DNA of 63,944 nucleotides, the filler included, from Octopus bimaculoides (taxonomy: Eukaryota): assembly GCF_001194135.2 (NCBI RefSeq). It is 7 parts of 5 records of this genome, joined end to end, with 100 filler letters (N's around TTAATTAATTAA, not from the genome) between each part and the next. Parts side by side here need not be neighbours in the genome. Positions count along the whole stretch, not along the records: positions 23,559 to 54,167 come from NC_068983.1; 6 more parts are not named here. The stretch is one strand, 5' to 3'. Each line of letters starts with the position of its first letter. Positions within the stretch are counted from its first letter, which is position 1. The position numbers were made by a program, and so were the translations under genes. A model generated the notes under the pieces. That model was not told the DNA's origin. It was given only the letters and a program-made list of their open reading frames with translations, and did not search any database. Of this stretch, positions 13,901 through 38,937 are shown one piece after another.

Positions 13901-13904
13901 TCTT

Positions 13905-14853: not shown

Positions 14854-14898
<45 letters not shown>

Positions 14899-15263: not shown

Positions 15264-15462
15264 ATGGCCAATGACATTCTAAAACGACACTGGGTAGAAA
15301 ACGAAAATCAGTGCACTGATAAGCGCTTGGTACACTCACCATAACGATTGTGTAAAAGCTAATGTCTACAGTAAAATCGCTGAAAAATTAGCGTCACAAT
15401 CCTTTTACAGATATGTAAAACAGATCGAAAACAAAATAAAAGAAATCTACACACGTACATGA
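15264..15462 (+). pseudogene. Myb/SANT-like (trihelix) domain remnant, possibly PIF/Harbinger ORF2-derived
   Basis: MANDILKRHWVENEN.../frameshift/...KANVYSKIAEKLASQSFYRYVKQIENKIKEIY fits W...IAEKL...R...Q..NKIK. Stop at 15342 needs a frameshift. Confidence 0.5.
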
Positions 15463-17891
15463 CAACAACTGACCCAACTCCAACAGGTCACAGGTCACTT
15501 CAACGAACCGTTAGCCAGCAACAAACAACATTCTCATTGATATCGCTGTCTGACCTAATTCCACCCAATACCACCGTGGCAAGCCAGGACTCACTACCAC
15601 AACAACAGCAGCCTGTTACTGCTTCTACATTGGAAGCGCCTTGTTTGGCACCACTATCTGACCTGATTCCAACCAGCCCTACTCTTGGAAGTCAAGTTTC
15701 ACGGCCGCTACACCAGCAACAACAACAACAGTCTGCTACTGCTATTATAATAGGAAGGTTCAAGCTTCATATTTAGGATTAAGTATTTTTTTTTTTACAG
15801 ATATCAGATATTTATAAGTTGTCAAATATTGCAGACTGGTACTTTATTTGTGCTGAAGAGGATTAAATGAATTTTGCCCATGACTACGTAGAATTGTGGT
15901 GTATAAATATGCTTCTATATCATGTGTGGTAAGTGGGTGTTTGAAGTGATGAATTACAGATGAATAACAATTCAAAGAGCTTCCATGGAGTCGCTTCATT
16001 TGCTAGAAACAACATTCACATCTTCACATCTGTCCTACTGCTTAGAAAAAAAAAATGTAATAAAGATTCCTGTGTTCGTTCAGCCGATAGAATCGAAGGA
16101 TTAAGACACCGTAAAATTGCCTTGGAAATATCTCTGCTTAATGTTAGCTGACTTGTAGCTAAGCAGTAAGAAAATAATAGGAACTGATTCGCATTGTATA
16201 TGATGTCAAATGGATGAAAATGAGTGTTGTGTTTGTACACATACATGCATAACATGCATACATACATATATGTAGTGTGTGTGTGTGTCAAAGGTGTATA
16301 TTAATATATTGATATATGTTTATACATGCATATACATATATACATATATATGAATGCTTATATGTGTGTGTATGTATGTATGTATGTATGTAGGTAGGTA
16401 GGTAGGTAGGTATATTAGCAAAGTATGAAATTATATCTTGATGATTCGAGGTATACTGTTGCAATGAATTTTTTTTTAATGGAAGTGAATTGAAAATATT
16501 TAACCTACTTGTCACTTCATGAAATACATGAACATCAGAAAATGTAGTGCTTGTTTCTTCAGTAACATAGTGAAGCCCTGTATCCTATATCAACATTGAG
16601 AGAAAATAACAATATGCCCTCTGGTGAAAGTCATAATAAGGATCATCCTTAAGGTAGTAGCAGATCAAAGATACATGGAGTAACCAATTCATAGTCAGTA
16701 ATATCTTATGTGAAAACCTTAATATGCTCACATTTTATTTCCTGGCAATACGACTCCGATAACCCATTACTTTCTTATTTTGTACCAGTCTTTAGAAAGT
16801 GATCGCAAGGGGTAGTTTATGTCATCTTATTCTATGCTCGCTAAATATGTTCAATGGAGAATTTAAAAGCATCAACCTCATCATACCAGTTACTAGTGGC
16901 TGATAATTTACTGTAAGTTTACTTAAAAATACAGCGAAACACACTTTGGTTCGTCTTTTAAGTGTTGGTATCCAAATGGTAATACATACAGATGAAGAAA
17001 CGGTGGAGGTTGAAAGGCATTGCGAAGCATACAAATGTCCTCTTATAAGCCTAAAGCTGTTCAACCCCATTACTTCTAGCCAGCTCCAATGCTTGTGAGA
17101 AATTTCTAATGCGCTTTTATAATTCAATCCCATTCTATTCGATGCTGTTTGTATTGAGCGAAATTAATGAAAAGTTTGGAGACTTACTCAAACGGCTTTA
17201 TAAGCCGTTTAACGATTCGTATTTCTTCTATCTACCGAATAGCGAACAAAATGCCATTTGTTATATAAGCTGCTAAATCCATACAACAGTTCTGCATGAT
17301 TAAAACATGTTTCAGATAATGAAAGAAATTAAAAGTTCAGGCTACAAATAGATAGTGGATAACTCTCTATTTCAAAAGAGCTGGAATCTGTTTATCTTAG
17401 GAAATGGAGGTCGAGATATGACATATTATATAACACGGCCGAAACAAATAAGTATCTCCGCAACGATCATTAAATAAAATTCGAATATCCAGTGTGGACG
17501 AGATATAAACGATCTCGGCTGTTGTTATCAAGTTGTTTAATCCTTACTGTATTATGCACATCTTGACGAGAAAAAAATGAAACAAAACAAAAAAAAAACA
17601 ATGATTTCGAATAAGTTAGAGAACTGCTATATTTTAGAGGTAAAGCAAATACGATTTAGTATTTAGTTGCATTTTTCACAAGTTGAACATCTACTTCAAA
17701 ATAACTAAATGACTGAAATTGCATTTTCATCTCAAGTATCTCAATGTTGAAAACATACCTACTAAGATTTGCTACTCTGATCATTCATAAAGAATACTCC
17801 TTATTACCTTACTTAAAGGTGCACGTTCTCAGTGTATGCAATTTTCCTATACATTTCCACAACTGGTTGCAACAAATTCTGCATTTCACAC

Positions 17892-18063
17892 TGTTGTGTC
17901 AACGCCCCCAGACGATGAAGTAGGCTAGCCCAATACGTAGATATAGAGGGAGAAGTCTAGACGCCGGGGGAAGTTGAATAGAGGTCATCGGAACGTGCGA
18001 TATAACGGTGGCGACGAGGATTTCGTATCTCACACAACCACTATGTAGTATTGTGATATAACA
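17892..18063 (+). mobile_element. Miniature LTR-like element with internal PBS (copy A)
   Basis: TGTTGTG...TATAACA termini; TGGCGACGAGGAT at 18009-18021; homologous to 19804-20024; flanks cacac/gacat (degenerate TSD). Confidence 0.7.
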
Positions 18064-18739
18064 GACATGATTAATGACACCAAGAAATGCACAATTATCA
18101 CGAAATCATGTTCTTATCCTTGAACGAATTTATGAATCTATGTCACAGGAAGAAATAAATGTAGTGGAGTGTAGAGTAAATATTGATCTCTTATATAATC
18201 ACTATATTGTCCATAAAAGGCGGGTATAATGCACAAAATCAATACCCTTATGTAACCGGAGTTTATTTTATCGAACTTGGAAAAATGATATAATAGATCT
18301 ACGCCTATCACCTTTGAATTGCTGCCTAAAATATTCGAACACTATATTCTAATTAATTTCGTCTGATTACATATTACGACAACAAGGCCAACGATCACCA
18401 ACAAATAGAAATAAATTATTGAGTGACGCTAACTTTCATTGGTCAGTTCACCTGCCAATAATAACAGCCAAATCTATCACAAATTACACCTTGCTTTAAA
18501 ATGTCTTAAAAAATAAGATAGTGTATAATGTAGAACACGAATTACAATATCTAAAAGAAAACTAGGATAGTTTAAGGTAAAATAACTTTGAATATGTCCA
18601 CGGGGTGAGTGGGTGACAAACGGCGAGCACACCTTACGCAATATCTGCATTCATAACAACAATAAATTTATTAAGTACGAGAGCAATTTTAACCAGAAAA
18701 GTGTAACATTCTTCAGGTAACCACAAAACGATCATAAGC

Positions 18740-18900
18740 ATCATCCACAACATTATCATCATCATCATCACCATCATTATCATCAACATCATAATCATTA
18801 TCATCATCGTCGTCGTCGTTATCACCAACAACAGAATTTCCACCACGCTCGCCCTCACTGTCACCAAATCCACCACCAACACCACAACTACCAAAGCTAC
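18740..18900. repeat. Degenerate (CAT)n/(CAC)n repeat
   Basis: Direct reading. Confidence 0.85.
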
Positions 18901-19803
18901 CAGATCCGCAATCACTCTTCTCTCATCCGCCTCTATCTCCTTCTCCTCCTCCCTCTGACCTCTTCTCCTCCAACATCATTCCCTCATCAACTTTAACATC
19001 GTCAAAATTATCATCTCTGTTATCTCATCTCCTCGTTAAATTTATTCGAATACCCATGTAAAGAAATACGCTCATCTACAGAAAAAAACCAAACCGTATT
19101 GGAGAAGGTGTATTTACATACACTAATGTAGCAGTTACTATCTTATCTGTCAATTTAGCATTTACTTCTACGTACTTTTGTTGAACATGTGTCAGGTTTC
19201 CACTCCTAATTTTTCAATGCGTTAATAATATTGCTGACAAGGTGGTTGGAGGGCGATAATATATTACTTATAATGTAACAATGATATAAGCGTGCTAAAC
19301 AGAATATTGATATAGAAAATTTCAACGAGTATGACTTTTCTATTAAATGAGTGAGTCTCGAAATCGTATGCTAGAAATAGCAACCAAACTGTCTACCAGA
19401 ACATCGGCATCTTCGAAATGATTTGAACATTACATATTGTATATCGGTTGTTTTATTCTTCAAAAGTACAAGATTAGGCTTTTATTGTTGAAACACAATT
19501 ATTTTCAGCATATAGAGAATGCTAAATTTTTGGCAGAAACATTAGAGTGTCAATATTTGTCCTGGCATTTTAAACTTCTGAGTTCCAATCCTGTTGTTAG
19601 TCACCTTTAAATTTTACCTTTTCAGGGCTGGTAAACGATATTTACCAGTAAAATACTGGTTCGATAGTATCGACTGTTCTCATGCTGCACACAGACATCA
19701 CATTGGATATTTAGCCTTCCAACAATGCTACAAATGATAATGAACTGAGTTTTAAACAACACCAGAAACACATTTGAAATTGTTATTAATCGAAATGGGA
19801 GAA

Positions 19804-20024
19804 TGATGTGTCGACATCCTCAGGCGAAGAAGTAGGATCTCGCAAGACATATAAATAGAGGTAGTCCGGCCGTGGTAGGTGTGTTAAGTAGCAGTTGAGT
19901 AGCAGTTGTGTAGCGGTTGAGTAGCGATCATCCGAAGGTGCTAAATAGCAGTAGCTTGAGACATAGCAGTGGCGACGAGGATTTCGTAGCTCACTCAGCC
20001 ACTGGTAGTATTTGAGACATAACA
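19804..20024 (+). mobile_element. Miniature LTR-like element with internal PBS (copy B)
   Basis: TG...CA termini, perfect 5-bp TSD GAGAA (19799-19803/20025-20029), TATAAATA, PBS TGGCGACGAGGAT at 19970-19982. Confidence 0.85.
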
Positions 20025-21114
20025 GAGAATTAAAATCATACTGAGTTATATTAATGCGTAATAATCAACGTATTTGGAAAGCACCATAATGTCAGTCAAT
20101 GCACTCAGGATCCACTTTTGAAATGCATTATTTACTCCACTTATCACCGACGCACCGCAAATAAACAATTTCTGAATAATGCTTTTCGTTAAAGATCAAT
20201 GAAATATGCCTACCCATTGCACACGTTTATTATTAAACTATTAATCAAATATATTTCCCAATCTCGAAATAAACTTACAGATTCATAATATTTTGTCATT
20301 GATCGTTAGATTTAAACAAAAAAGGTATAAAAAAGATAATATCGAAATTTATCTTTATCTTTGTTTTTAATTTGCTTCATCCAAAAGAAATATTTATTAT
20401 TAAATATAAAAAGATTATGATTGCTATTTTTATTAACGTAATACACTAAAAGAGATTTTGCGTACTTCTAATAATTCTAAAATATTTTCTTTCAAGTCAC
20501 ATGATTCATTGTATTCTTTCAGTCAGTTTTATTATCTTTATTTCCACGCACAAATTTTGATCATTTCCATTCCCTCACTCACTCAGTCACTCACTCACTC
20601 ACTCATTCACTCAATTATTCACTTCTAAGCTTCTCTTACCCTCTTCCTTGCTGCATGTCTGCCCTGCGTTCTATGTGTGTGTATGTGTAAGTATATGAGT
20701 GTGTGCGCGTCTCTGTGTGTTTGTGTGTGTGTGGATGGATGGGTGTTTTATACACACACACACACGCACGCACGTGCATATTCACACCGTCACATGCACT
20801 TTGACATGTATATATATATATATATATATATATATNNNNNNNNNNNNNNNNNNNNNNNNNNNNNNNNNNNNNNNNNNNNNNNNNNNNNNNNNNNNNNNNN
20901 NNNNNNNNNNNNNNNNNNNNNNNNNNNNNNNNNNNNNNNNNNNNNNNNNNNNNNNNNNNNNNNNNNNNNNNNNNNNNNNNNNNNNNNNNNNNNNNNNNNN
21001 NNNNNNNNNNNNNNNNNNNNNNNNNNNNNNNNNNNNNNNNNNNNNNNNNNNNNNNNNNNNNNNNNNNNNNNNNNNNNNNNNNNNNGCACATCCAGACATA
21101 TTCATACATAGTTA

Positions 21115-23435: not shown

Positions 23436-26400
23436 TATATATATATATATATATATATNNNNNNNNNNNNNNNNNNNNNNNNNNNNNNNNNNNNNNNNNN
23501 NNTTAATTAATTAANNNNNNNNNNNNNNNNNNNNNNNNNNNNNNNNNNNNNNNNNNNNCACAAAGCATTTCTACTGATTACAGCTGTGTATCACATGATG
23601 GCATGAGTCATGTAATCCACAATATTCCCATCTTGATATTAACTAGATTATGTAATTTTGAGAAATTTGAATGTCTACTAGGAAATGAATGCCTAACAAA
23701 AAACATCACATATAAATGTTAAAAGTAGTCTACATACTTCCACTTACAGTTCCACTTCTATTTCATATATTTAGAGGGAGAGATGAAGCAAAAACAACAT
23801 TGCTCTTCCCAAAGGTCTGGGAGAGAAAGGAGAAAAATATCGATTTTCATCTAATGTGGAGCATTGCTAGGCATGCTAAGCTTTATGCTAGTGGTAGATA
23901 TGGTGGCAATCTCTACCATTTAGAATTACTGAAAACCATAAAAATGCACTGATGATGTTATTATTAGATCAGTTGAATTAAGGATCAAATGACCACATTT
24001 TATCCATAGAACTTTATAATTTATATGTATCTACCTGAGTGGTTGATACATATCTATAACTCTACAATACAGATACGTATCTATAACTCTTTAATCATTA
24101 GTAATAAGAACCAGGGATTATATTTAAGTAGACTATCATATCTTAATACTGTTAATACTAATAACTGATCAGATTTAAGCATATCCCTTGTTCTAACAAC
24201 AGATACTGATTACTGTTATTGTATATGATTTATATATTTTGCCTATTTTATATAATTTAGAATTTAATAACTTTATTCAGTTTGCTTCTGACCTTATATG
24301 ATATCTTCGGAGCATTTGCTTCATCCTCCCAGGTTATGGCTTTTAAAATTCATTATAATTCATTATAATCCTATAACTTCTTTAACATTTATAAACATTT
24401 ATTCTCTTTAAAATTTCTTAGTGCTCACCACAATTTTGAATTATTATAGTAGTGATCTGACCTAAATACTTGTTGTAATGTGATTTGTTACATACAATAA
24501 ATAAGATAACCAGACAACAGTAAAAACAATGTAACAGACTAACAAATCTATTTAAGAAACAACAATCAATATTCCTTGTGAACAAACCAACCAACACCTT
24601 CCATCTTCACTGCAAACTAACGCAAACTTCACTCGATTCCGAACTCTCAACTCACTTGGATCGTTACTATTTATACTTTACTTGGACCATTCTATTTCTT
24701 GCAAGGAGGCATCATAACTCTCATCACAACATCTCCCCTTTTGAGATTTCGACTACTGTGAGAAAGTGGAACTTCTCTATTTTTTTTTCCAGCACCTCTC
24801 CCTCTTTTTTTAGCTGTTGTATCGTAATTGTTGCCTGACTTTTAAGGTAGTATTGTTCGTTGCATACACCACTTATTCTTTTCATTGTACTAAGCACTCT
24901 TGTTAGCACTTTTTTCTTTGTTTGAAAATTTAATATTTTTTACATTTAGGTGTTACTTCCATATATTCAATCTGTTTTTGTTTTCTGATGCTAGTTTTAT
25001 GGGGTTTGATATTTCTCGGTTCTAGCACTTCAAAATATCATTGAAGACTTCCATTGGTATTACCTTTCATTCTTCTGTATGTCTCATCTTTAACTGGTTA
25101 AGGTGTCTCTTCTGTTCGGAATGTTGTCCTTTAATTAAATACATCACGTTACTTCATTTTTTAATTGCACAGCCATTCTCCCAACCTTCTTTACCATTTT
25201 TGTAATTTTTTAAATGTACTTTATCTCCTACTTCGAAATGTTTTGTAATATTTCTTGTATTTCCTTCAAATGTATTTTTTGTCTTTCCTCTATATGTATT
25301 TTTCCTGGCAATAATTTATCGATTTTATTTTACACAAGAACATTAACTCTGCTGGTGACTTTCTTGAATTAGTATTTGGATTTGACATTATTCTATATAC
25401 TCTCAAAAATTTCGTGAGTGCCTCATTACTATCTAGCTCATTCCTAGCTTTTCTTAGAGCTCTTTTGAATGTCAAAAAATCTTTCCACTAGCCCATTTGA
25501 CCCCGGGTGGTAGGACAGGGTAAAGATGTGCTTTATGGCATGTATTTTGCAGAAATTTCTTAATTACTATACCATGAATTGTGTTCCATTATCTGAAAGT
25601 GACGTGTCTACAACACTGTATAGAGCAAATAACTCGAGTATTGTTGCCTTTATTGTTGTCTTTGCTGCGGGTTTATTACACCTGTATACTTCTGGACACA
25701 TTGTATAGTTATCCACAGTGAATAGATAATATGCGCCCGTCATTGGTCCAGCATAGTCAATATGTATCCTGGACCATGGGCTCTCAAGCTCAGGCCACGA
25801 TTGGTATTTTACTGGTGATGCTTTGGGTGCCAACACGCAACCTCTACATGCTTTCACCAATTTCTCGATGTCCGGTCCATAGTCAGCCATTATACAATAG
25901 ACATTCATTAAAGCTATCATTCTGGACATTCTCGGGTGCTTACAGTGGAATTGTTGCAATACCCGTTTCTGTAGTGCACTTGGTACTATTACACTCTATG
26001 TATACATTAAGGCATCATCGCATAGTGAGAAATTATTTGAATTTGTATTTTTTTATTATGCTTATTTTTTAATGTTTCTTTCATTCTTGTAATGTAACTA
26101 TCCTCTACGGTTTTCATTTTTATATCAAGTGCTGTCACTGGCAGTTCCTGGATTATATTACACACAATACTTTTTACTTCATTTTCTGACTGCAATGATA
26201 CTATCACGGTCTCTTCCAGTGGTTCCATGTAAATGCGAATTAACCTCAATAAGTAGTCTGCATGACCAATTTTCTTCGACGGAACATACTGCCTCTTAAA
26301 ATTGTAGTTCAGCAATATTGTACCCCAGCATTGTAATCGGTTAGCTCTATGGGTAGGCAATCCCTTCTTTGATCCAAAAATTAAAAAAGATATTTCCACA

Positions 26401-27031
26401 AGTACTCTTGTTAAAACTAGATCTATGCACAAAGACTATTGTTTCTTTAAAGCAACTTTCATTGAGTTTTTTGGAGAATATGAAATTACAGTAATATTCA
26501 TGCTCTAACGGAACTAATTTTTGCAATAAGAATCCCACTTTTGTTTGTCTGACCATGATTTGCAATCTTGTTTAAAAATCTCCTTGGACCTTCTGTAGTG
26601 CGATGCAGAAGTTATACCTTCCTCTGGGTTATAACTGAATAATGAACTTACCTCATTTTTAGACTTCTTTGAATATAGCTCCAATAATTGTTGTTGCAGT
26701 TGTTGCTGTAATAGTTGCTTCTGCAGCTCCTGTTGCTGTTCTTGTTGCCTTTGTGGCTGTACTATGGAAGCTAATAGGTCTTCCATTATTTAACAAATTG
26801 TATCACGAACAAATTGTTAAATAACCTACATGAGCTTTGAAACCCTCGTCGCCAGATGTTGTAACGTGATTTGTTACGTACAATAAATAAGATAACCAGA
26901 CAACAGTAAAAACAATGTAACGATCTAACAAATCTCTTTATGAACCAACCGTCAATATTCGTTGTGAATGAACCAACCTATACCCTCCAACTTCACTGTG
27001 AACTAACATTAACTTCACTCGACTCCGAACT

Positions 27032-28903
27032 ATTTTCTTTATTATGAGCACATTGGTTCTATAAAGAAGGGACAATACAAGGACAGACAACACAACACAG
27101 TGAGGTACATTAAACATATCATCATCATCATCATCATCATCGTTTAACGTCCGCTTTCCATGCTAGCATGGGTTGGACGATTTGACTGAGGATATAACGA
27201 ATGAAATTATGAATATAATGATATAATGAAAAATGAAATGTCTTCCCTGCCCCTACATGCAGGTAGTGCCATTTAACTGTTTATGTATCAATATTAACTT
27301 ACAGTTCATTACTCTTTCTTTGCATCGTTTTATTTTTTTTTGTTTGTTTTAAAAGTCATTATTTTAAGATTTTAAATATTTCACATACTTTCATATCAAA
27401 TATTCTATTATATCCTCAAATGCCACCACTGGTGGCATCTCATCATATCGAACCTGTAACGGCGATATTTCAGTTTGTTCACCAAATAGTTCCTTTAACC
27501 ATTCACCTTTCTCTCAAGCAAGACCGACCTGTCGTCCTCGGTACACTCCCTCCCTGATAACTTGACTCTAATTACATTTTTCATTTTTGTAATCTTTCTC
27601 TCAATCTCTACACTCTTTTTATAGTTTATCATCGTTCGAATGTGTTTTCCTTTTGGTATCAACTCCTGTTTTCCGTTGTTATTCTCCCCTGATGTTCCTG
27701 GTATTGGTATCTCTCTTACTCTTTGTTGTTGCTATCTCTCTTCTCTCTTCCTTTCCTTTCTGAGCACTTCTTTCCTCCTCCGTAATTTTCCTTTTTGATA
27801 TTTCTGGTCTTTCACACTGATTCTCCTCTATGTTTTCTTTTCTCTTTTTCTGTAGACTTTTGGATGGTGAATTAACGTTTTCTTCTCTTTTCTTCTTTCT
27901 TTTTCCGAATGTATATTTTTCTCCTACATTTTCTATCTTTTTGCTTACTTGCATTTGTAACTCCACTCTTTGTTCCTCTTCCTCTTCCTGCTTCTCTTGT
28001 TCTACATCCTTTTCTTGTTGCTGGGGACACTTTGCTTTCATGTGTCCCCGTACTCCGAAGTGGTAGCAGATGGGAGGTCTTCCCTCCACTACCACTCTTT
28101 GTTTTATATCCTCGGGTAATACAATCTCTTCTACTATTTTGTGCAAATCTGATAAACTGATTTAGACCGCCACCTCGAGGCCGCATCCCCAATAGTTTAC
28201 CTCTGTTGTCCTTGTGACTTTCAGAATTTTTGTTTCCTCCTCCGTGTTGAAGAGGATGGCTGCCACCAGCCATACCTCATCGATCTCTGGGGGCACTCTG
28301 CCAATCCTAACTCTGGCCGCACGTTTGCCACTGTAGGTTGGCAGTAGTGTCCACTCTGACGACCTCAGTGGCACAGTGGAGTACTTTTCGGTCGCAAACC
28401 GAACCTCCACTGTGCCATACTTCTTTCCTCTAGTGTAGAATGTCGTGAATTCCTTTATGTCCTTTGGACATCATTCCTCCACTGCTTCCACCGTCGCTAT
28501 TTTCACCTTTTTACTTCATGTTGACAGCGTTCTATAGACTATTGTCCTTTTTGTTACCCTCTCCTCCACTTCTTTGGGTGATGTCAGCCTCAGGCTGGTA
28601 CCCTCTTTTACGATAAGTTCATTATACTTTTTAACTCCTTTCTCCTAGAATTGTATTTCTCTCACTTGCAATGCATCAACAAACAAACCTTTTCCGGCTG
28701 CTTCAGCATAGCTACCGACTGGTTGGGTTTCCATATTTTCGCCTGTTACAACTTCCCTCATAAATGGGGAAGAGAACAATCAAAAATAACAATTCCCCAA
28801 AAATTCATCTAATTAACAATAGGTACAGAATATACCTTCAACAATTTTTAAGCAATGCGACTTGCATCTAACCAGGATCAAAAATGATTAAGTCAAACAG
28901 CAA
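27032..28903 (-). mobile_element. ORF1-only L1/Tx1-like non-LTR element (HAL1-like), full-length copy
   Basis: About 170-bp 5' UTR. Decayed ORF from ATG 28734 (METQPVGSYAEAA) through GTVEVRF, EWTLLPTYSGK, VVEGRPPICYHFGVRGHMKAKCP and IERKITK to LKELFG, ending about 27395. 3' UTR ends aataaagaaaat. No APE or RT. AACT duplicated at the junctions. Confidence 0.8.
27115..27192 (+). mobile_element. Short repeat fragment with (CAT)n nested in the ORF1-only element
   Basis: catcatcatcgtttaacgtccgctttccatgc... is absent from the sister copy; a similar start occurs at 45405-45450. Confidence 0.6.
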
Positions 28904-30477
28904 AACTCTCAACTCACTCGGATCATTACTATTTATGCTTTACTTGGACCAGTCTATCTCTCGCAAGGGGTTGTTGTAACTCTCATCACAACAATGCTAA
29001 GCTTGTATAATTTCCATTGTTTTGGTTAATAGAAACATTGGGATTTATGGCTTCATGGTTTTATGGTTTTATTGGAAATATAAGTTCTGCTTTTACCTTC
29101 TCTATTAATTCTAGCCTTTCAATACGTAACTTTGTAACAGCTATGTTACTGATCTATCTAAATTTTGATATTTAACTGATATGAATTTATAATTTTTAGG
29201 GTTGTTACTGTTTATTGCCTAATCAACTTCCATTAGTCTAGTATACACATTATTTGTTTCTTTATGCCAACGCCATCTTCCTTTTAACTGTGTTGTCCAC
29301 TTCCTCTACTGGATGTATCCCAATCTGTTTCTTTTTAAGTATTTATAGGTTATGGTTGCTTGCACTGTAATTAAGGCAATATTTACAAATCAAATATTTT
29401 TTCCTTTCCTCTCCTCTGAAATTTTGCATTGAGCTTCACTATTCTCTACATTTTATCCTTAAGTTATTTTTCCCTGAATAATAATTAGTTGGGTTACCCT
29501 TACATAAAGCTAATATTCTATTAATTCCATATTAATTAGTTGGAAAACTTTAATCAAGAAGAATTAAGTTTATTAACCATGTCACTCCTTTGATATTTTA
29601 AACATTATAACACAACAAATGGATTTTCTTTGGAACAATATTGGCTATGATCTTCAACAAAGTTTTGAAATGTCATGCTTGGTGAATGCTATCTACTGGT
29701 TCTGTTAGTGTTAGGTCTTATGAGTGACATCACTAAGTTTAATGACATCTTTTGAACAGATATATTTTTTAGGTCAGGCACTGTGTCAGTTGTAACTACG
29801 AGTGTTCCACTTGATTTGATCAACAGAACAGCCTGCTCTTGAAATTAATGTGCAGGTGGCCAGAACACTCCACAAATATGCATACCTTTAGTGTAGTTCT
29901 CAAGAATATTCATCATGACACACCAGATGTGACAAGGCAGGACCATTGAACTACAGTTACATCTCATTTTTGCCAGTTGAGTGTACGGGAGCAATGGGAA
30001 ATAAATTTGATGCATTTTGCACCATTAACAAAGGGTTATTTACTTAAGTGACTGATTTGTGTCATTCCGTCTTCCCATTATGTAAGGTATTCTTCATTTT
30101 GATATGCTTTCATCCTTAATGGATCCCCTTAAACCAAATCCATTTATGTGTTTGTGTGTGCATGTGTGTGTGCATGTGTGTGTGTCTATATACATATATN
30201 NNNNNNNNNNNNNNNNNNNNNNNNNNNNNNNNNNNNNNNNNNNNNNNNNNNNNNNNNNNNNNNNNNNNNNNNNNNNNNNNNNNNNNNNNNNNNNNNNNNN
30301 NNNNNNNNNNNNNNNNNNNNNNNNNNNNNNNNNNNNNNNNNNNNNNNNNNNNNNNNNNNNNNNNNNNNNNNNNNNNNNNNNNNNNNNNNNNNNNNNNNNN
30401 NNNNNNNNNNNNNNNNNNNNNNNNNNNNNNNNNNNNNNNNNNNNNNNNNNNNNNNNNNNNNNNNNNNNNNNNNNNNN

Positions 30478-30514
<37 letters not shown>

Positions 30515-30519
<5 letters not shown>

Positions 30520-31203
30520 TAATCAAAGGACATACTAAGTCTGTCTACCTGCTGGAAATAACAGTCAAAACTCCTATTTAAATTGCCAAAATACACTGAT
30601 AATGACTACAGAAATCAACCATCCAAAGGCAAACAGGCTAAGACAATGTTCCAGCATACATCTAAGTATTTGGACTCACGTGAACTGGTTTCTGCACTGG
30701 CATAATAGCTTCAGCTTCCTTAGCATGCATTACCATGATAGCGACCCTCAACCTGTTGTGTTGAAGTCTGTGTTGCGACTGATTCATTTTGCGCTGAAAT
30801 CATGGCAGCCGCCAGTGTGAAAATAATTTCAATACAGAGCAACTAATTCATGAGAAATTATTTTTTCCTGAATTATTTGCTCCATATTGAAATTATTTTC
30901 ACACTGGTGGCTGCCATGATTTTGGCACAGAATGACTCAGTTGCAGAACAGACTTCAACATGGCAGGTTGGGAGTTGCTATCATGATAACGCTTGCTGAG
31001 GAAGCTGAGGCTATTATGCCAATACAGAAACCAGTCCACGTGAGTCCATATACTTGAATGTATGCTAGGAGAACGTCTTAGCCTGTTTGTCTTTGGACGG
31101 TTGATTTCTGTAGTTATTATCAGTGTATTTTGGCTACTTAAATAAGAGTTTTGACTGTTATTTCCAGAAAGTAGACATACTTAGCATTCCTTTGATTAAT
31201 TTT
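30515..31203. mobile_element. Foldback element with about 335-bp inverted arms
   Basis: 30515-30850 is an imperfect reverse complement of 30869-31203, with an 18-bp spacer. Confidence 0.9.
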
Positions 31204-31377
31204 AATCCTTCAGCTATTTAAGGCTTTTGGTGGGGACCTGTATTCGCCCACATTATTGATTCTGTTATTATCATTTTTAAATTGTTACACCAGATAATAA
31301 CAGTCAATGATATCTTCGCAAATTATTTTTTGTGAATTAGTTTTTTTCTCTTGAATTATTTGCTCCTAATTGAAATT

Positions 31378-31408
<31 letters not shown>

Positions 31409-31414
31409 CATATA

Positions 31415-32666
31415 TTAGGTTGTCTCACATAACAAGTTGCATTTGAAAAAGGAAGCATTAAAATTGTTTTTTAATTTTTAGAATATTTATTTATTTAATC
31501 AAACTATGATCCTTGTTCATTTATAACTTTTATCCAACGTTCCTGTAAGGCATATATTCCATCTTCAAAGAATTTGTCATCTTTTACACTGATAAACTGT
31601 TCAAATGCGTCAATTATCTCTTCTTTATTTAAGAATGTTTTATAGCAAGCTTGAAGGGTTTAAATATGTGATAATCAGTAGGAGAGATATCAAGAGAATA
31701 AGGACGATTTGCTAAAATTTCATAATTCAGGCTTTGCAATTTGTAGACTGTAGCTTGAAAAGTATGAGGTCATGCATTATCATGAAGCAAAATTTGGTCA
31801 TCTCTATTCACTAATCTGGGTTGCTTCTTTTTAAATTTTTCATGCATACAAACAACTTCTTGACAATAGGATGCTTCTGTTACAGTTTTTCCTTATTGCA
31901 AAAATGAATAATGAATAACCCCCTTTGTTGAGCACCATATAGTATCCATCAACTTTTTAGGGTGCAATGGTTTTGGGTAGTGTTTTGGTGACTCTCCTGC
32001 ATTTAACCACTGTCCTATCCTCCTGCTGTTATCGAAGAGTATCCATTTCTCATCACGCGTAATGAGGCGATACAAAAATGGTTCTCTTTCCAATCGAGAA
32101 ATCAACATGGAACACACTGTAAAGCATCGGTTTCTTTGAATCTCATTAAGTTGATGGGGAACAAACCTATCCATCTTTTCGACTTTTCCAATTTACTTCA
32201 AGTGTCGAGAAGCAGTTACGGGAGATGTCTGGAGCACTGATCCAATTTTTTGGACCATTGTTCTCGGTTTTCGTTTAACCAAAGCATTCAATTCATCATG
32301 CCAAATGACTGATTTTGGTCTCCCTCTTGATTCACTTTTAAGGTTTTCATTTCCTGACCAAAATCTTTGGAACCATCTCTGAACAGTTCCAATGTCAACA
32401 GAATCATTACCAAAAGCCCGCTTGATATTTCATAGAGCTTTATTGGCAGAGTGACCCAAATTGTATTCATACAAGAAAATTACTCGGTATTGTTCAGTTG
32501 TCATAATTGTCATAAGAGCTGTGGGTAGCAATTTTGAATGGTAGTATTGTCTAGAAAGAAAGAGTTAAGATTAAACACAAGCATATACATAGAAACTCAT
32601 TAAAATCCATTTATGGACGACTCATATGAAACCCATTTAAAATATATTTCATGTGAGACAACCTAA
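31415..32666 (-). mobile_element. Near full-length mariner transposon with decayed transposase
   Basis: 16-bp TIR ttaggttgtctcacat at both ends, TA flanks, 1252 bp; FVPHQL (WVPHEL motif), ITRDEKWILFDN, LHPKKLM. Confidence 0.92.
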
Positions 32667-32680
32667 TATATATATATAAA

Positions 32681-32781
32681 GAAAATAGGACAAGGTAGAA
32701 AATGCTAAAATAATTTTATCATGTACCTAAATGTTCTTCATGATAAAACTATTTCAGCATTTTCTACCTTGTCCTATTTTC
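32681..32781. repeat. Hairpin with 43-bp arms (MITE-like)
   Basis: 32681-32723 vs 32739-32781 with two mismatches and a 15-bp loop. Confidence 0.85.
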
Positions 32782-33930
32782 CTTATACATATCAACTTGT
32801 GTATTACTTTTCAACTTTCTACCTGGTATTTATAGTGTTAAACACTTTCGGTATGCTAATTAGGGATTCCTTCATAGAGTAACTACTCCATTTGCTGAGT
32901 ATATAAACAGTGTTTCTCTGGAGACTGTCAGAATGATGTGGATGCCTCTGATGAGAACCTAGTAAAGTTTGAAAGTTGATTAATGTTGTTTATTTTTTTC
33001 AGTCTGTGGAGAAATGGCTAAAATTTGCCTTGTTTGTAATTATACCATATGTTACACACACACACATACATACACACACACACACACACATATATATAGA
33101 CCTTACAATCGTGGGCCCAAAACACTTACTATTAAGTCACATACTTTCACATGAATAGTCAAAGGGCTATTCTATAATTCACAACACCACTTTGCTATCC
33201 ACCCTCATGATTGACAGATTGTAGTCCCAACGATTTTACATTTCTTAAAAGCTGGTAATCCTTATTTGAAATTTCACTTGTTGATGAACTGTTGATTTAT
33301 CAGCATGTCACTGCTCACATGTATATTTAGTAAGCCTGGTGAATTGAGAGTTGTGTAATGCATTGCATAATCTTATGGATATTGTATGTACTTCATACCT
33401 CACAGGATCCTGTTTACATGGCAATAAAGACTTTCAATGACAATTATAGCAGTATAAGATAACCCATTCATATGCTTTTACACCTCGCTTAAACTTTCAT
33501 TCATCCTTGGATACTATCAAAGTGCAAATTACCAACCAACAGCAAACTACCCTTCATTGATGTATTTTCTACTACGGCAGAGGATTATTTACTTAAGTGT
33601 ATAATTTGTATTCTTTATTTTGGTATGCTTCATCCTTAATGGAACCCCTTAAATCAAATCCATCTATGTATGTGTGTGTGTATGCCTATATATGTACGTG
33701 CATATACATATGTGTGTATGTGCGTGTGTGTGTGTATGTATGTGTGTATGTATGTAGGTAGGTAAGTATGCATTTACCATATTTCATTCCATAACTGCCA
33801 TCTATGTAAAGTACAGCATCACATAGTCGGGCTGTTATCTGTCTCTTTTTAACCCATGACACAAAGCCAATTGGTATGCTTTGATTAATGCATATATATG
33901 CTTATATATATACTTATATATATATATATA

Positions 33931-34182
33931 AATTTAAAAGAGAGTTTTGACGCTGATATCCATTATTATTGAAATTTATTCCTATGTCAACATTTCTGTA
34001 TAAGGCTATATTTAACTGTCAAATTTTCCCTGATGATGTGTAAGGTAAATTATACGTTTGACTTGTGTTTGACTTGAGTTTGACTTGAATTTGACAGTTA
34101 AATATAGCCTTATACAGAAATGTTGACATAGGAATAAATTTCAATAATAATGGATATCAGCGTCAAAACTCTCTATTAAATT
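33931..34182. mobile_element. MITE with about 95-bp near-perfect TIRs
   Basis: 33931-34025 is the reverse complement of 34088-34182 with about one mismatch; the spacer carries tandem tttgacttg units. Confidence 0.9.
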
Positions 34183-35454
34183 AAAATTTTGGATACATAA
34201 CCAAGGAGAACGATTCTTAAGGAGTCTACTTAAGACTTTTTGCAGAGAAATCCCTTGCTATATTGATAGCGATTACATGTTTTTCTCATCATCAACACAT
34301 TGTGGAGATATCATCATATGAACAAATATATATATATATATATATATATCACCATTATTTAGTACACAGTTTTCCATTCTTGTATGGAGCAGATGGACTT
34401 AGTTGAGTCATATTTTCTATGATTTGAAGCCTTTCCTGTTCCCAACTCACAATTCTTTCCAAGCAAAGTAATTTTTTCCCATAGTTAGAGGTGTCTTTTG
34501 TGGAAGATTGAGAAAAAATTAGCAAATTTGTTTGTATGATGTGCATTTACAACTATCATATGATGTGTAGACAAGAGTGCACACAAACACATGCACACAG
34601 ACATACATGAATTTACATACATATATACTTTTATATATTTATATGTGTGTGTGTGTGTGTGTGTGCATGTGTATGTATGTATGCCTGTGTGTGCATGTGT
34701 ATGTATGTACATATATATATATATGCACACACACATATATATATACACACACACAAACACATGTATATATACTTCAAACTATCCAGAGGGAAGTATCTTT
34801 TCTCATATTAATTTTCAGTTTTCTGATAAATTCTATGGTTAGGTAATTTTATAAACAAACATATAAACAATTACAAACAAGACTATTATATTTCATTTAA
34901 ATTTGCAAATCTAAATACCTTATTAGATAACATATCTTTCAGCTAAATACTATTATTGATAATAATTACACAATTAGTTAGTATAAATGGTACTTAATTT
35001 TTCAGATCGATTAACTAAGAATAGTAGAATTAAATGCTAGAATGCACTTGAGAATAAATATAAGTTTTCAACCAACACTGTATGTATAAATTAAAGTGAA
35101 TTAGGATGCACCAGACAATTGTAATTTTTGGAATGTTCTCAGGAATTAAGTACCATGTATAAATGTCTATGGAGACATTATATTCATAGCCACTAGAATG
35201 CAGTGAAGCCCTCAATTTCAGTGGCTTATTGTAACGTAGTTACTTGTCACCAATTATTGTAGTATCGCCAATTGTTATGACAATACTTCTTTTTATACTA
35301 TAACAGTGTAGTAACAATAAGCATATAACGAAGCAGGGTAACAACAATGTAACAAGCCAACAAACTCTCTATGAACTATACATGAATCAACAAACGATAT
35401 TCCGACAAATTACCAAAGCAACACATGATTTCCTGCAATTAACGCCTGCTCTCT

Positions 35455-36937
35455 ATTTCTTTATTTTGGCAATGCAACCATTCACACAGAGGGGACAGCA
35501 CAAGGACAGACAGAACACCACAGTGGGGACAAAAAACATAAAACGAATGAAAAAATGAAAAAAATGTATGATGAACTGGCTGCATTGAGCCCCACTCTTA
35601 AGCAGTACCATTTAACTGCTAATTTATACAATTTTTGAAAGTCTTTTTCTTTTTGCACCTTTTTTTTTTTCCATTTTTAAAAAGTCTTTTTTTTTTTTTC
35701 TTTTAAAGGACTCCTCTATTACCACTCATTAAGGGTATTAATTCTTCATATTTAATTACTTTTGGTAGTTCCTCAAATTCAATCTCTTCCCCCCAAAGGG
35801 TTCACCTCATCTCCAAATAGTTCTTTCAATCTTTGATATATTTCCTTGTCAGTCACCATACCTTTGATGTGTTTCGGGTAACTTTCTGTTGGCTGTTTAA
35901 TCCTTATGGCACCTTTAAACTTCGTTATTTTCCGTTCTATGGCGGTACTTTTCACATATGTGACTACATGCCATTTTTTCTTATTCCCATTTACTTGTTT
36001 ATGCCACAGAGACCTGGGCCGTCCGGTTAGTCGTTTCCCTTGGTTCCTCCATGTGTACATCAGAATAATCATCCACGATTATGTCTTCCACCCTATGTTG
36101 CGATGCTTCTACTGGTATATCTGACCAGTTCCTCGGTACCTCCTCTATTTCCTTCATTCTTTTTTGGTTCTCTGGCAGAGAGCTCAACCGCTCTTTCCTC
36201 TTTAACCTATTTATGACAGTAAATGGCTCCTCTTTATTTTCCTTTTTTCCGGTCTCTCCTCTTCGGCGGGTTGTCTTTCGTGTTGTTGTTCCTCTATTTT
36301 ACCTTCTTGCTGAGGGCATCTTGCTTACATGTACCCTCTTTGTTTACATAAAAAACGTGTTGGAGGTCTTCCCTCCACCACCGCTCTTAACATAATGTCT
36401 TTTGGTAGAAGAATCTCTTCTACAATTCCGTAGGTGTAGGTCTTTTAACCTAACTTGAATCACCATCTCTACTTAGTCCCAGCAATTAACTTTCTTCGTT
36501 CTGGTTGTCTTCAGAATCCTTACATCTTCCTCCATTCTGTGCATGACTGCTGCCACCAGCCATGCCTCTTCGATCGCGGTGTGCACTCTGCAGACTCTCA
36601 TTCTGGCAACATGTTTGCCACAGTACGTCGGCAGCAGCACCCACTCTTGTGTCCTTATCGTCTCAGTGGAGTGGTTAATAGCGTCCTCTTCGCTGGAGAA
36701 CTTGACCTCCACTGTTCCGTATTTCCTTCCACGTGTATAAAAGGTGGTTAGTCCTTTCACGTCCCGTAGACATTCCTCAATTACCTGTATTTGGGAAATC
36801 TCTTTTTTTTTTTGTAGAAGTAGATAGTGTCTTGTATACTACCGTCTTCCTTGCAATATACTTCGTCACTTCTTCTGTTGGGGGTCATATTTAAGCTGGT
36901 CCCTTCCTTTTGTAACAATTTGTATCCTTCTTTCCAC
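35455..36937 (-). mobile_element. ORF1-only L1/Tx1-like element, second copy, 5'-truncated
   Basis: RGRKYGTVEVKF, EWVLLPTYCGK, VVEGRPP, IERKITK and LKELFG as in 27032-28903; homologous 3' UTR ending aataaagaaat; 5' junction ambiguous (36930-36943). Confidence 0.8.
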
Positions 36938-38937
36938 TTCTTTCTCACTCAGACCGCTACTATTTGTAGTCGTTCGGTCAAGTCTATTCTCGCAGGGTGT
37001 GTTATGACTCTCGCCACAATATCTCCCCTTTTGAGATTTTGACTTCCTTAGGAAATGAAATTAATTTTTTTTCCTTTCTTTTCAACAACTCTCCCTTTTT
37101 GAAATTTTGCGTCCCTAGTGAGTTCAGTACCTTTTCCGCTTAGGAATTATTTCTAAATGTTCAGTCTATTTACGTTTTCTGCTACTGCTCCTTCCAGGTT
37201 AAACCTCTTTCGGTGCTAGCACATCGAATATATCGTAAAACACTCCCAATGGAATTTCCTTCCTTTCTTCTGAATGTCTGATTTTTAATTCATTTAGGTG
37301 TCGTTTATACTCCCATCTTTGGCCTTTTATTATATACATCATGTTTCCAATTCTTTTAGTCACTACACCATCCTACTAACTCTCTTCGCCGTTTTTGTAT
37401 ACTTTGAAATGGACTTTGTCAACGGCATCAAAATATTTAGTTGATTTTTTTGTATTTTTTTCCTTTGGCAACAATTTATCGAAGATCGATTTAATATTTC
37501 GAGCAAAAAGCTCTGCAGGCAACTTGCCTGAACTGGTATTTGGACTGGCCATTATTTTGTACATCCTTAAGAATTTAGTTAGCATTTTGCCATTTCCTAA
37601 CTCCTTTCTTGCTTTTCTTTTGCGCTCGCTTGAAGGTATCTACGAATCTTTCTGCTTGCTCATTTGACCTTGGGTGGTTGGGTGGGGTAAACATGTGCTT
37701 GATTACATGCATTTTGCAGAATTTCTTGAACTCGTATCCTGTAAATTGTGCTCCATTGTCCGATGCTATGGTGTTCAGAACACCGTATCGATCAAAAAGT
37801 TCATGCAAGAACTTTATTGTTGCTTTCGAGGTAGGTTGACTGCAACGACATACTTCCAGCCACTTGGTAAAGCTATCAACAATGATCATGTAGTACGTGC
37901 CATTCGCTGGTTCAGCGTAGTCTATATGTACGCAGGGCTACGGACTATCCATCTCAAACCATGATTGGTATTTCACCGGTGGTGCTTTGGTTGCTAACAC
38001 ACAACTTCTACATGATTTTACCAAATTCTCAATGTCCCAGTCCGTTGCCAGCCAATACACGTAACTCCTCATCAAAGCTTTCATTCTTGACATACCCGGG
38101 TGTCCATTATGAAATTCATGTAATATCCATTTCTGTAGGGCAATTAATACAACCGCTCTTTGTACGTACATTACTACATCATCGCAGAGTGAAAAATGTT
38201 TCGCATTCATGTTTCTCTTTTGTTTATGTTTCAAGGTTTCCCTCATTTGTGTGATGTATTTGTCCTCTGCTGATTTACTTTTTATATATTGTATAGTCAC
38301 TTGCAACTCCTGAATGACATTACACATAAAGTTTTTAATTTCCTTCTCTGATTGTAATGCAGCTATCACCATATCTTCCAGAAGTTCCGCATTCTTTGGA
38401 ATTAGCCTAGATAAACCATCCGCATGGCCAATTTTCTTAGAAGGAATGTACTTCATCTTAAAGTTGTGATTTAACAATATTGTACCCCAGTGTTGTAATC
38501 TGTTAGCTGTATGGATAAGAATTATTTTCTTTGATCCAAAAATTGATAGTAACGGTCAGTATTCTGTCTGAAGCCGAAAACTTCTACTTTGAAGAAATCT
38601 GTGAAATTTCTTCACGGTAAAAATAATCGCTACAGCTTCTTTCTCTATCTGACTGTAGTTTTTTCTGCTGCAATCAGAGAACATGAAGCATGAACCACTG
38701 CCTTCATAGTACCATGTTTGTTTGTGTAGCAAAGCTGCTCCTACACCATATTCAGAAGCATCAGAAGCGTCAACAATCTCCGCTGCAGGATCGAAATGAG
38801 CCAGCGTCAAATCCGAAATTAATATTTTCTGAATATTGTGAAACGCTTTTCGACAGTTATTTGACCAATTGCATTTAGCATCTTTCTTTGGAGCTCTCGG
38901 TTCATACATATTTGGCATGTAATTTTGATAATAGTTC

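What the first reader, a model, noticed from the sequence alone, without database searches (positions are those of the whole stretch)
27025..36950. Two independent insertions of one non-LTR family at the transcription start of Gypsy LTRs
Seen: the same ORF1-only family interrupts the 5' LTR of Gypsy 1 (after 27031) and the 3' LTR of Gypsy 2 (after 35454), co-oriented with the host. Mapped onto the intact partner LTRs, the breaks fall 30 nt (24675 to 24646) and 31 nt (42033 to 42003) downstream of the first T of TATAAATA. They lie 5-6 nt past a conserved AGTGAG and just before AG. The host LTRs are diverged, the two inserts are diverged, and different LTRs are hit, so these are separate events. 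Established: TATA lies about 30 nt upstream of +1, and Tx1-clade LINEs target specific repeats, including other transposons. Inference: a retrotransposon that targets LTR promoters by sequence or via the Pol II initiation complex, capturing the promoter while disabling the host. Template switching during LTR replication would place the insert in both LTRs, which is not seen.
Basis: partly seen in the sequence, partly recalled or inferred. Interest (0 to 1): 0.88.

Follow-up and report, generated by a model that had tools for sequence, protein, structure and literature searches.

The report
LINE-derived element homing to Gypsy LTR start sites
Two decayed octopus Gypsy retrotransposons each carry, at the same spot about 30 bases after the TATA box of one LTR, an independent insertion of a gag-like-only offshoot of an L1/Tx1-type LINE; this is another site-preferring LINE rather than a new kind of element.

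Summary
The piece is octopus DNA with two Ty3/Gypsy-order elements on the minus strand, G1 (24471-28993) and G2 (35227-42086). Each has its own 5-bp target duplication. Each has one intact and one interrupted LTR.

The inserts (27032-28903 and 35455-36925) lie in the host's orientation. They end 30 and 31 nt after the first T of TATAAATA. They differ in 5' extent and junction repeats and are about 65% identical, so they are separate events.

They encode only an ORF1-type protein (RRM-like domains plus CCHC knuckle) with no EN/RT remnant. A full-length relative in O. vulgaris has a homologous ORF1, an APE+RT+zf-RVT ORF2 (L1/Tx1 group) and the same 3' tail.

A third copy, chosen only by protein similarity (contig L009), again follows the TATA box of a homologous Gypsy U3.

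Other copies lie head-to-tail with each other or in unrelated sequence, so this is a preference rather than strict specificity. Copies in other contexts start with GTTGAG. These are the six bases that precede the insertion point in the G1 LTR, which suggests LTR-driven source transcripts.

Tx1 families that prefer LTR retrotransposons are already published. The start site is inferred, not mapped, and targeting through the Pol II complex is untested.

The parts
24471..24731 (-). G1 3' LTR, intact (261 bp): U3 24731-24646 with TATAAATA starting at 24675; R-U5 24645-24471
   Evidence: purine tract aaaaggggaga lies immediately upstream on the minus strand; ends TG..CA
24732..26856 (-). G1 internal region, a deleted copy (gag fragment 26786-26514, integrase fragments 26432-25567)
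   Evidence: 67-69% identical to the two ends of the G2 interior; ORFs
26857..27031 (-). G1 5' LTR, R-U5 part, downstream of insert 1
   Evidence: 87% identical to 24471-24645
27032..28903 (-). Insert 1: near full-length ORF1-only LINE derivative. It has a 5' UTR of about 168 nt, a decayed ORF 28734-27394 and a 3' UTR/tail 27393-27032 ending AATAAAGAAAAT. The 5' edge is ambiguous, 28903-28913.
28904..28993 (-). G1 5' LTR, U3 part (CATAAATA box), upstream of insert 1; flank AGCAT
   Evidence: 87% identical to 24642-24731
35227..35454 (-). G2 3' LTR, R-U5 part, downstream of insert 2
   Evidence: 83% identical to 41777-42002
35455..36925 (-). Insert 2: the same family, 5'-truncated by about 290 nt or more (no 5' UTR or start codon). 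It has a decayed ORF and ends AATAAAGAAAT. The 5' edge is ambiguous, 36925-36945.
36926..37022 (-). G2 3' LTR, U3 part, upstream of insert 2
   Evidence: 84.5% identical to 41993-42086
37023..41776 (-). G2 internal region: gag, protease, RT (39640-39326), RNase H (39044-38556), integrase (38477-37575). All are decayed, with 99 stops in one frame.
41777..42086 (-). G2 5' LTR, intact: TATAAATA starts at 42033; the site homologous to the insertion point is 42003|42002
30200..30477 (.). Assembly gap between the two elements; not part of any feature

Best explanation
The inserts are dead copies of a non-autonomous, ORF1-only derivative ('E') of an octopus L1/Tx1-group LINE.

Shown:
- E keeps the LINE's ORF1 and its 3' tail.
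- E has no endonuclease or reverse transcriptase.
- Full-length relatives encoding both exist in Octopus genomes.
- Two, probably three, independent copies sit in one orientation at the same place in LTRs of one Gypsy lineage, 30-31 nt after the TATA box.

Inferred: E is copied into DNA by target-primed reverse transcription, using the ORF2 protein of the autonomous LINE in trans. The first nick falls just before the AG that follows AGTGAG(N5-6). The 5' end is joined by microhomology, which gives variable short duplications and one 5'-truncated copy.

Inferred life cycle: a copy sitting at this place is transcribed from the LTR's own U3 promoter. Its RNA therefore starts with a few LTR bases, and E copies elsewhere do begin with GTTGAG. 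Its AATAAA signal lies only 6-7 nt from its end, so the RNA must also end in the first bases of R. An RNA flanked by LTR sequence on both sides would pair with nicked LTR DNA of the same Gypsy lineage and home there. The same logic would place copies directly upstream of existing copies and build head-to-tail arrays. The insertion separates U3 from R and so should cripple that LTR.
For: Anatomy and independence of the two events.

ORF1-only nature:
- The ORF matches only Octopus proteins.
- A profile of it finds 429 clusters of fragments, none with RT or EN.
- There is no ORF2 remnant in the window or in five other E loci.

Autonomous relative:
- L008 holds 5.27-kb units with ORF1 36% identical to insert 1 (E 3e-25).
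- Its ORF2 has Exo_endo_phos + RVT_1 + zf-RVT.
- Its best PDB hit is human L1 ORF2p at 1e-61.
- Its 3' tail aligns with both inserts (A6).

Retrotransposition hallmarks: 5' truncation of insert 2; 13-bp and 17-bp target duplications around a full and a 70-bp copy in L001.

The 70-bp L001 copy carries the 13 nt that flank the full copy 0.9 kb away. This shows that transcripts run into the 3' flank.

Third LTR case, L009, chosen only by protein similarity and contig length:
- Its U3 is homologous to the G2 U3 (z = 6, 1 of 2000 shuffles; 31 invariant columns).
- E then begins 32-43 nt after the TATA box.
- Gypsy gag-NC, protease and RT follow, collinear with G2 (tblastx 1e-46).

Leader: E begins GTTGAG, GTTTGAG, GTTGAA or GGGAGA after four unrelated upstream sequences. 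G1 has GTTGAG at -6..-1 of the insertion point, and the full-length LINE lacks it.

Precedent: Tx1 families that prefer LTR retrotransposons, and tandem insertions sandwiching a duplication (PMC4494074).
Against: - The sample is small. Of about seven E copies with a readable junction, three are in Gypsy LTRs, and two of those three define the finding.
- The O. sinensis copy closest to insert 1 (L001, 72%) sits in a local 213-bp repeat with no significant similarity to these LTRs.
- L009 lacks the 3' part of E and R-U5, through deletion or possibly misassembly, so its 3' junction is unknown.
- The start site, the nick site and trans-mobilisation are not shown.
- The two hosts are homologous, so a shared target motif cannot be separated from shared ancestry.
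- Inserts (about 65%) and hosts (67-70%) are similarly diverged. That would also fit co-inheritance.
- Tx1 clade membership was not tested by phylogeny.
Confidence: 0.62

Rival explanations
1. Capture at the RNA level. During Gypsy reverse transcription the strong-stop cDNA reaches the 5' end of the Gypsy RNA (+1). It jumps end-to-end onto the 3' end of a co-packaged E RNA and copies it. It then returns by microhomology to R/U3 at the 3' end of the Gypsy RNA. The same end-to-end jumping by the LINE enzyme would make the head-to-tail arrays.
For: It explains, without any sequence-specific nuclease, why the 3' end of E abuts what looks like an RNA 5' end. This holds both in the LTRs and at the 5' ends of other copies (L004, L005, L007, L008). 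It also fits the microhomology at the 5' junctions and the absence of a poly(A) tail.
Against: Plus-strand strong-stop synthesis would copy the insert into both LTRs. G1 has it only in the 5' LTR and G2 only in the 3' LTR. The 5'-only state has no simple route in the replication scheme. The intact partner LTRs show no scar.
Confidence: 0.12
2. Inheritance. An ancestral Gypsy acquired E once in its LTR, and the long LTR was propagated as part of the element. The short LTRs arose by later precise loss or by conversion from short-LTR relatives.
For: Divergence between the inserts (about 65%) resembles that between the hosts (67-70%). An insert in a 3' LTR between U3 and R is heritable in principle. 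L009 shows E next to Gypsy pol again.
Against: The two inserts have different 5' ends (full-length versus truncated inside the ORF) and different junction repeats. Each element has one long and one short LTR, on opposite sides. Two precise deletions between 4-10-bp repeats would be needed. E also exists on its own with ordinary target duplications.
Confidence: 0.1
3. Targeting of transcription start sites as such. The integration machinery is drawn to the Pol II initiation complex or to open promoter DNA, so E lands at the +1 of active LTRs and at the +1 of active copies of its own family.
For: All three LTR cases lie 30-43 nt after a TATA box. Family members abut each other's 5' ends. In L005 the first copy begins about 37 nt after TATAAAT.
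Against: There is no direct evidence. The two L001 insertions show no such context. TATA-like strings are common in this AT-rich DNA. Homology-guided homing explains the same junctions with known mechanisms.
Confidence: 0.1
4. Coincidence or a regional hot spot without specificity.
For: Only two cases lie in the window. Nested transposons are common in octopus DNA.
Against: The same nucleotide (within 1 nt) and the same orientation recur in LTRs that are about 30% diverged, at roughly 5e-6 by my estimate. A third case comes from an unrelated data set.
Confidence: 0.03

Closest known systems
Target-specific Tx1-clade LINEs: Tx1L in Tx1D, Keno in U2 genes, Kibi/Koshi in microsatellites, Tx1-Mar in a Mariner family, and Tx1-8_Crp / Tx1-4_AMi in LTR retrotransposons (Kojima 2015, PMC4494074)
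   Same: APE-type LINE of the L1/Tx1 group with zf-RVT. Insertion into one position of another repeat family in one orientation. Variable target duplications or truncations. Tandem copies. Non-autonomous partners that share the tail and the target preference.
   Different: Clade membership was not tested by phylogeny here. The mobile unit seen is an ORF1-only derivative, not a SINE or the LINE itself. The position is the presumed start site of a Gypsy LTR. The preference appears loose. The published note on LTR targets gives no position.
R1 and R2 of insects (rDNA-specific LINEs)
   Same: Reliance on the host unit's promoter. Transcripts carry target sequence at their ends, which helps precise junctions. 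No poly(A) tail is needed.
   Different: R2 uses a restriction-like endonuclease and a ribozyme. The targets there are rRNA genes transcribed by Pol I. Here, co-transcription and homology-guided pairing are inferred only from the GTTGAG leader and the position of AATAAA.
HAL1 (half-L1) of mammals
   Same: A LINE lineage that keeps ORF1 and has lost ORF2, presumably mobilised in trans.
   Different: HAL1 has no known target preference. Its ORF1 is the coiled-coil/RRM/CTD type without a CCHC knuckle.
Ty3 and Dictyostelium TRE elements (integration at start sites through transcription factors)
   Same: Integration within a few bases of a transcription start.
   Different: Those elements target Pol III genes through TFIIIB/TFIIIC contacts. 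No factor contact is shown here.

Membership tests
Non-LTR retrotransposon, L1/Tx1 group (non-autonomous derivative) | ORF homologous to ORF1 of an autonomous LINE | tested here: met
   Insert 1 and insert 2 match L008 ORF1 (36-40% aa, E 3e-25 and 2e-16). In L008 that ORF1 lies upstream of an APE-RT ORF2 in the same 5.27-kb unit.
Non-LTR retrotransposon, L1/Tx1 group (non-autonomous derivative) | 3' tail shared with the autonomous partner | tested here: met
   The last ~60 nt (TTGTATTGTCCC.TCTTTGT...AATAATAAA) align among insert 1, insert 2, L001, L004, L007 and L008 (A6).
Non-LTR retrotransposon, L1/Tx1 group (non-autonomous derivative) | Own endonuclease and reverse transcriptase | tested here: not met
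   No tblastn hit of the L008 EN/RT in the window piece or in L001, L004, L005, L006 or L009. The element is therefore non-autonomous.
Non-LTR retrotransposon, L1/Tx1 group (non-autonomous derivative) | 5' truncation and variable target duplications (target-primed reverse transcription) | tested here: met
   Insert 2 lacks about 290 nt or more of the 5' end. Junction repeats are 4-10 bp in the window and 13 and 17 bp in L001.
Non-LTR retrotransposon, L1/Tx1 group (non-autonomous derivative) | ORF1 protein with RRM fold(s) plus CCHC knuckle | tested here: inconclusive
   CCHC is found by Pfam in the intact relatives P0028 and P0056. The AlphaFold model of P0028 (pLDDT 69) has two beta-alpha-beta-beta-alpha-beta units. 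The best PDB matches are tandem-RRM proteins, but only at E = 0.01-0.2. Pfam finds no RRM.
Tx1 clade specifically | Placement inside Tx1 in an RT phylogeny | not tested
   No reference LINE sequences were available. The only support is zf-RVT, a best match to L1 ORF2p and the report of active L1-Tx1 families in O. vulgaris (PMC13282606).
Target-specific LINE | One kind of sequence in more than 20% of flanks (criterion of PMC4494074) | tested here: inconclusive
   3 of about 7 readable E copies flank a Gypsy LTR (insert 1, insert 2, L009). The sample is tiny, and two of the three define the finding.
Target-specific LINE | Same nucleotide position and orientation in independent events | tested here: met
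   3' junctions lie 30 and 31 nt after the TATA T, and both inserts are co-oriented with the host. In L009 the 5' junction lies 32-43 nt after TATA, also co-oriented.
Target-specific LINE | Endonuclease that cuts the target sequence | not testable with these tools
   This needs a biochemical assay.
Ty3/Gypsy LTR retrotransposon (the hosts) | LTR pair with TG..CA ends, 5-bp target duplication, purine tract, and RT-RNase H-integrase order | tested here: met
   The tRNA primer site was not assigned.
Strong-stop template-switch recombinant | Insert present in both LTRs of the new copy | tested here: not met
   One LTR of each element is intact.

The most novel reading that the evidence does not exclude
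The family does not read a DNA sequence. It is delivered to transcription start sites as such, through the Pol II initiation complex, open promoter DNA or the 5' end of nascent RNA. This would explain both the LTR insertions and the head-to-tail arrays at its own 5' ends. It would be a Pol II counterpart of Ty3/TRE start-site targeting, used by a LINE to parasitise the promoters of other retrotransposons.
Probability: 0.12. Interest if true: 0.8.

Novelty: new member of a known kind. Interest (0 to 1): 0.5.

Why it matters
It adds a concrete case, mapped to within a few nucleotides, of one retrotransposon family living inside the promoter of another. The LTR-derived leader appears to be a sequence fossil showing that the guest uses the host's promoter. 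If a census confirms it, the pair would be a tractable system for three questions: how LINE derivatives choose targets, how homology at RNA ends guides integration, and how transposon families suppress each other in cephalopod genomes. These genomes are very repeat-rich and have active L1-Tx1 families. For annotation, such long 'LTRs with an ORF' should be split into host and guest.

Tried and rejected
1. Insert ends as LTR halves. I tested whether the insert is the RNA form of a gag-only LTR element, making an LTR-int-LTR-int-LTR composite. By eye the ends looked like U3 and U5. Shuffle tests showed no similarity above chance, so I rejected this.
2. L001 target as a diverged Gypsy LTR. It has CATAAG 31 nt upstream and a U5-like end. 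Global and local alignments were not significant (z 0.3-1.1), so I do not count it.
3. Rfam scan of L001 for ribozymes of Penelope-like elements, prompted by the direct and inverted flanking repeats. There were no matches.
4. Getting more copies:
   - Three protein searches found few annotated relatives. One large profile query timed out.
   - Several look-ups found nothing on record.
   - Gypsy relatives from another cephalopod assembly (L002, L003) share no nucleotide similarity. L002 has two intact short LTRs.
5. Alignment of the 5' UTRs by MAFFT was too noisy to define 5' ends. Anchoring on the GTTGAG motif worked.
6. Supplements of PMC4494074 are not held.

Full report
**What is there**

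The usable piece (23559-54167) is AT-rich, microsatellite-rich DNA with five N gaps. The insert's reading frame matches only Octopus proteins, so the source is an octopod.

Self-comparison and reading of the minus strand show two LTR retrotransposons, both on the minus strand.

- **G1** runs from 28993 to 24471. It has an intact 261-bp 3' LTR (24731-24471) and a deleted interior.
- **G2** runs from 42086 to 35227. It has an intact 5' LTR (42086-41777). Its decayed interior encodes RT, RNase H and integrase in that order (Pfam).
- Both have TG..CA LTR ends.
- Each has its own 5-bp target duplication: AGCAT/AGTAT for G1 and AACCA/AGCCA for G2.
- The LTR pairs are 87% (G1) and 83-84% (G2) identical. 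The two interiors are 67-70% identical. These are old, separate integrations of related families.

**The observation**

The G1 5' LTR is split after 27031 by 1872 bp. The G2 3' LTR is split after 35454 by 1471 bp.

Mapped on the intact partners, the downstream junctions lie 30 nt (G1) and 31 nt (G2) after the first T of TATAAATA. They are 5-6 nt after AGTGAG and directly before AG.

Both inserts end AATAAAGAAA(A)T and have no poly(A). Both lie in the orientation of the host.

- **Insert 1** is essentially full length.
- **Insert 2** starts inside the reading frame. It lacks about 290 nt or more and has a purine-rich microhomology at the junction.

The upstream edges are ambiguous, by 10 nt in insert 1 and by about 20 nt in insert 2. 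The junction repeats can therefore be read as duplications of 4 and about 10 bp or as microhomology.

The events are independent for four reasons:
- the 5' ends differ;
- the junction repeats differ;
- different LTRs are hit;
- the inserts are only about 65% identical.

Chance co-location is about 5e-6 by my estimate.

The assembly gap at 30200-30477 lies between the elements in microsatellite sequence and touches none of these features.

**What the insert is**

Frame 2 of insert 1 gives a decayed protein of about 450 aa. It begins METQPVGSYAEAAG and continues with RRM-like domains, a CCHC knuckle, a Lys/Glu-rich stretch and a conserved C-terminus. Pfam sees nothing in the decayed copies. It does find the knuckle in intact relatives.

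A profile search finds 429 clusters, nearly all short octopus fragments, and none has an RT or endonuclease. A model of the intact relative P0028 shows two RRM-like units. Its best structural matches are tandem-RRM proteins, but they are weak.

The decisive link is locus L008 from O. vulgaris:
- It holds 5.27-kb units with a homologous ORF1 (36% aa identity, E 3e-25).
- Its ORF2 has Exo_endo_phos + RVT_1 + zf-RVT.
- The best solved relative of that ORF2 is human L1 ORF2p, at 1e-61.
- Its 3' tail aligns with those of both inserts.

No EN/RT remnant exists in the window or in five other loci that carry the short element. The insert is therefore an ORF1-only, non-autonomous lineage ('E') of an L1/Tx1-group LINE, present in several Octopus species.

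A recent O. vulgaris repeat annotation lists 13 recently active L1-Tx1 families (PMC13282606). I could not run an RT phylogeny, so 'Tx1' remains an inference.

**Where other copies sit**

I could fetch only a few loci.

- **L001 (O. sinensis).** A copy 72% identical to insert 1 has a 13-bp target duplication inside a local 213-bp repeat. That repeat is not significantly similar to these LTRs.
- **L001, second copy.** A 70-bp 3' fragment lies 0.9 kb away with a 17-bp duplication. This fragment carries the 13 nt that flank the full copy. Transcripts of this family therefore run into their 3' flank. That is expected, because AATAAA lies only 6-7 nt from the element's end.
- **L004 (O. bimaculoides) and L005 (a Logan contig).** The 3' end of one copy abuts the 5' end of the next.
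- **L007 and L008.** The full-length LINE forms head-to-tail arrays.
- **L009.** I chose this Logan contig only for protein similarity and length. It starts with unrelated flank. A Gypsy U3 follows that is homologous to the G2 U3, with the same TGTTGTGG start and TATAAA box (z = 6, 1 of 2000 shuffles, 31 invariant columns). E then begins 32-43 nt after the TATA box, in the same orientation. After a break in E comes Gypsy gag-NC, protease and RT, collinear with G2 (tblastx 1e-46).

L009 is a third, independent case of E at this place in a 5' LTR. Its downstream junction is lost.

**A leader that looks LTR-derived**

E copies preceded by four unrelated sequences begin with GTTGAG, GTTTGAG, GTTGAA or GGGAGA. 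The four upstream contexts are another copy's tail in L004, another copy's tail in L005, unknown flank in L006 and the L009 U3. The full-length LINE lacks these bases.

In the G1 LTR, GTTGAG occupies positions -6 to -1 of the insertion point, and AGTT follows on both sides. The simplest reading has three steps:
1. An ancestor of E sat at this place in a G1-like LTR.
2. It was transcribed from the LTR promoter, starting about 25 nt after the TATA box.
3. It passed the LTR bases on to its descendants.

The odds of an exact six-base match at that position by chance are about 1 in 4000. It also means the true start site may lie about 6 nt upstream of the break.

**Mechanism**

The best explanation is target-primed reverse transcription by the LINE's ORF2 protein in trans, with a preference for this LTR site. 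The preference would be reinforced by LTR-derived sequence at both ends of RNAs made from LTR-resident copies. This is the logic known from R1, R2 and Tx1-type elements. It also accounts for the head-to-tail arrays.

Shown:
- the anatomy;
- the independence of the events;
- the ORF1-only nature of the insert;
- the existence of an autonomous relative with a shared tail;
- transcripts that run into the 3' flank;
- the recurrence in a third LTR.

Inferred:
- the nick site;
- trans-mobilisation;
- promoter use;
- homology guidance;
- damage to the host.

**Rivals**

- **Capture by template jumping during Gypsy replication.** It would explain a junction at an RNA 5' end. It predicts the insert in both LTRs, which is not seen.
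- **Inheritance of a long LTR.** It conflicts with the different 5' ends and the discordant LTR pairs.
- **Direct targeting of Pol II start sites.** It is not excluded, but it has no direct support and does not fit the L001 insertions.

**Comparison and novelty**

Target-specific Tx1 LINEs are well known. Kojima (2015, PMC4494074) already notes two crocodilian Tx1 families that prefer LTR retrotransposons, and also notes tandem insertions of their dependants. ORF1-only LINE derivatives are also known (HAL1).

What is new here is the particular pairing, the position at the presumed LTR start site, and the LTR-derived leader. I rate it a new member of a known kind, of moderate interest. A genome-wide census would settle how strong the preference is.

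Noticed in passing
L008 4438-19184 (O. vulgaris OX597840.1); L007 about 4500-20850 (O. sinensis CM016867.1): Head-to-tail tandem arrays of a full-length 5.27-kb L1/Tx1-type LINE. Units are 99% identical in O. vulgaris and 75-88% in O. sinensis. The 3' end of each unit abuts the next unit's 5' end, and the 5' starts vary at the L007 junctions.
   Followed up: partly
L004 8450-10390 (O. bimaculoides CM046615.1): A circularly permuted copy of the ORF1-only element. The part from codon ~156 to the 3' end is followed directly by the 5' UTR and codons 1-159, with about 30 nt present at both outer ends. This could be a remnant of a tandem pair, a reintegrated circle or an assembly effect.
   Followed up: partly
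L009 about 1385-1450 (Logan SRR11869391 contig): The ORF1-only element breaks off after about 330 codons and runs straight into the Gypsy gag zinc knuckle, protease and RT. This is either a roughly 1.7-kb deletion spanning the rest of E, R-U5 and the gag N-terminus, or a chimeric contig. The same contig was assembled in 5 samples.
   Followed up: partly
L001 4763-5175 and 7117-7325: The target of the O. sinensis copy is a 213-bp sequence present twice in direct orientation (92.5% identical), plus an inverted partial copy forming a palindrome. Its nature is unknown.
   Followed up: partly
window 40499-40707: A repeat of about 160-200 bp inside the G2 interior recurs inverted at 46643-46865 and 48173-48354. 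It also occurs several times in L001 (212-448, 3474-3707, 3968-4200). It is probably a SINE or MITE nested in G2.
   Followed up: no
window 31893-32174 (minus strand): A 93-aa ORF with a mariner-type transposase DDE fragment (Pfam Transposase_1, E 6e-12), lying between the two Gypsy elements.
   Followed up: partly
window 30516-31202, 32670-32792, 33931-34182: Three self-complementary palindromes of 688, 123 and 254 bp (84-86% arm identity). The first starts right after the assembly gap. Sequences on the two sides of the gap match 33608-33684 directly and 33871-33929 inverted.
   Followed up: no
window 43430-44138: A tandem repeat of 123-bp units (94-100% identical) interrupted by two assembly gaps (43238-43457, 43817-43997).
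   Followed up: no
window 47047-47265: A long imperfect (ATC/GTC)n trinucleotide tract.
   Followed up: no
window 50982-51256 versus L001 3678-3952: A 276-bp stretch is 88% identical between the window and the O. sinensis locus. It is probably an interspersed repeat shared between species.
   Followed up: no
L005 285-330: The first ORF1-only copy in this contig appears to begin about 37 nt after a TATAAAT box. The upstream sequence could not be shown to be an LTR.
   Followed up: partly
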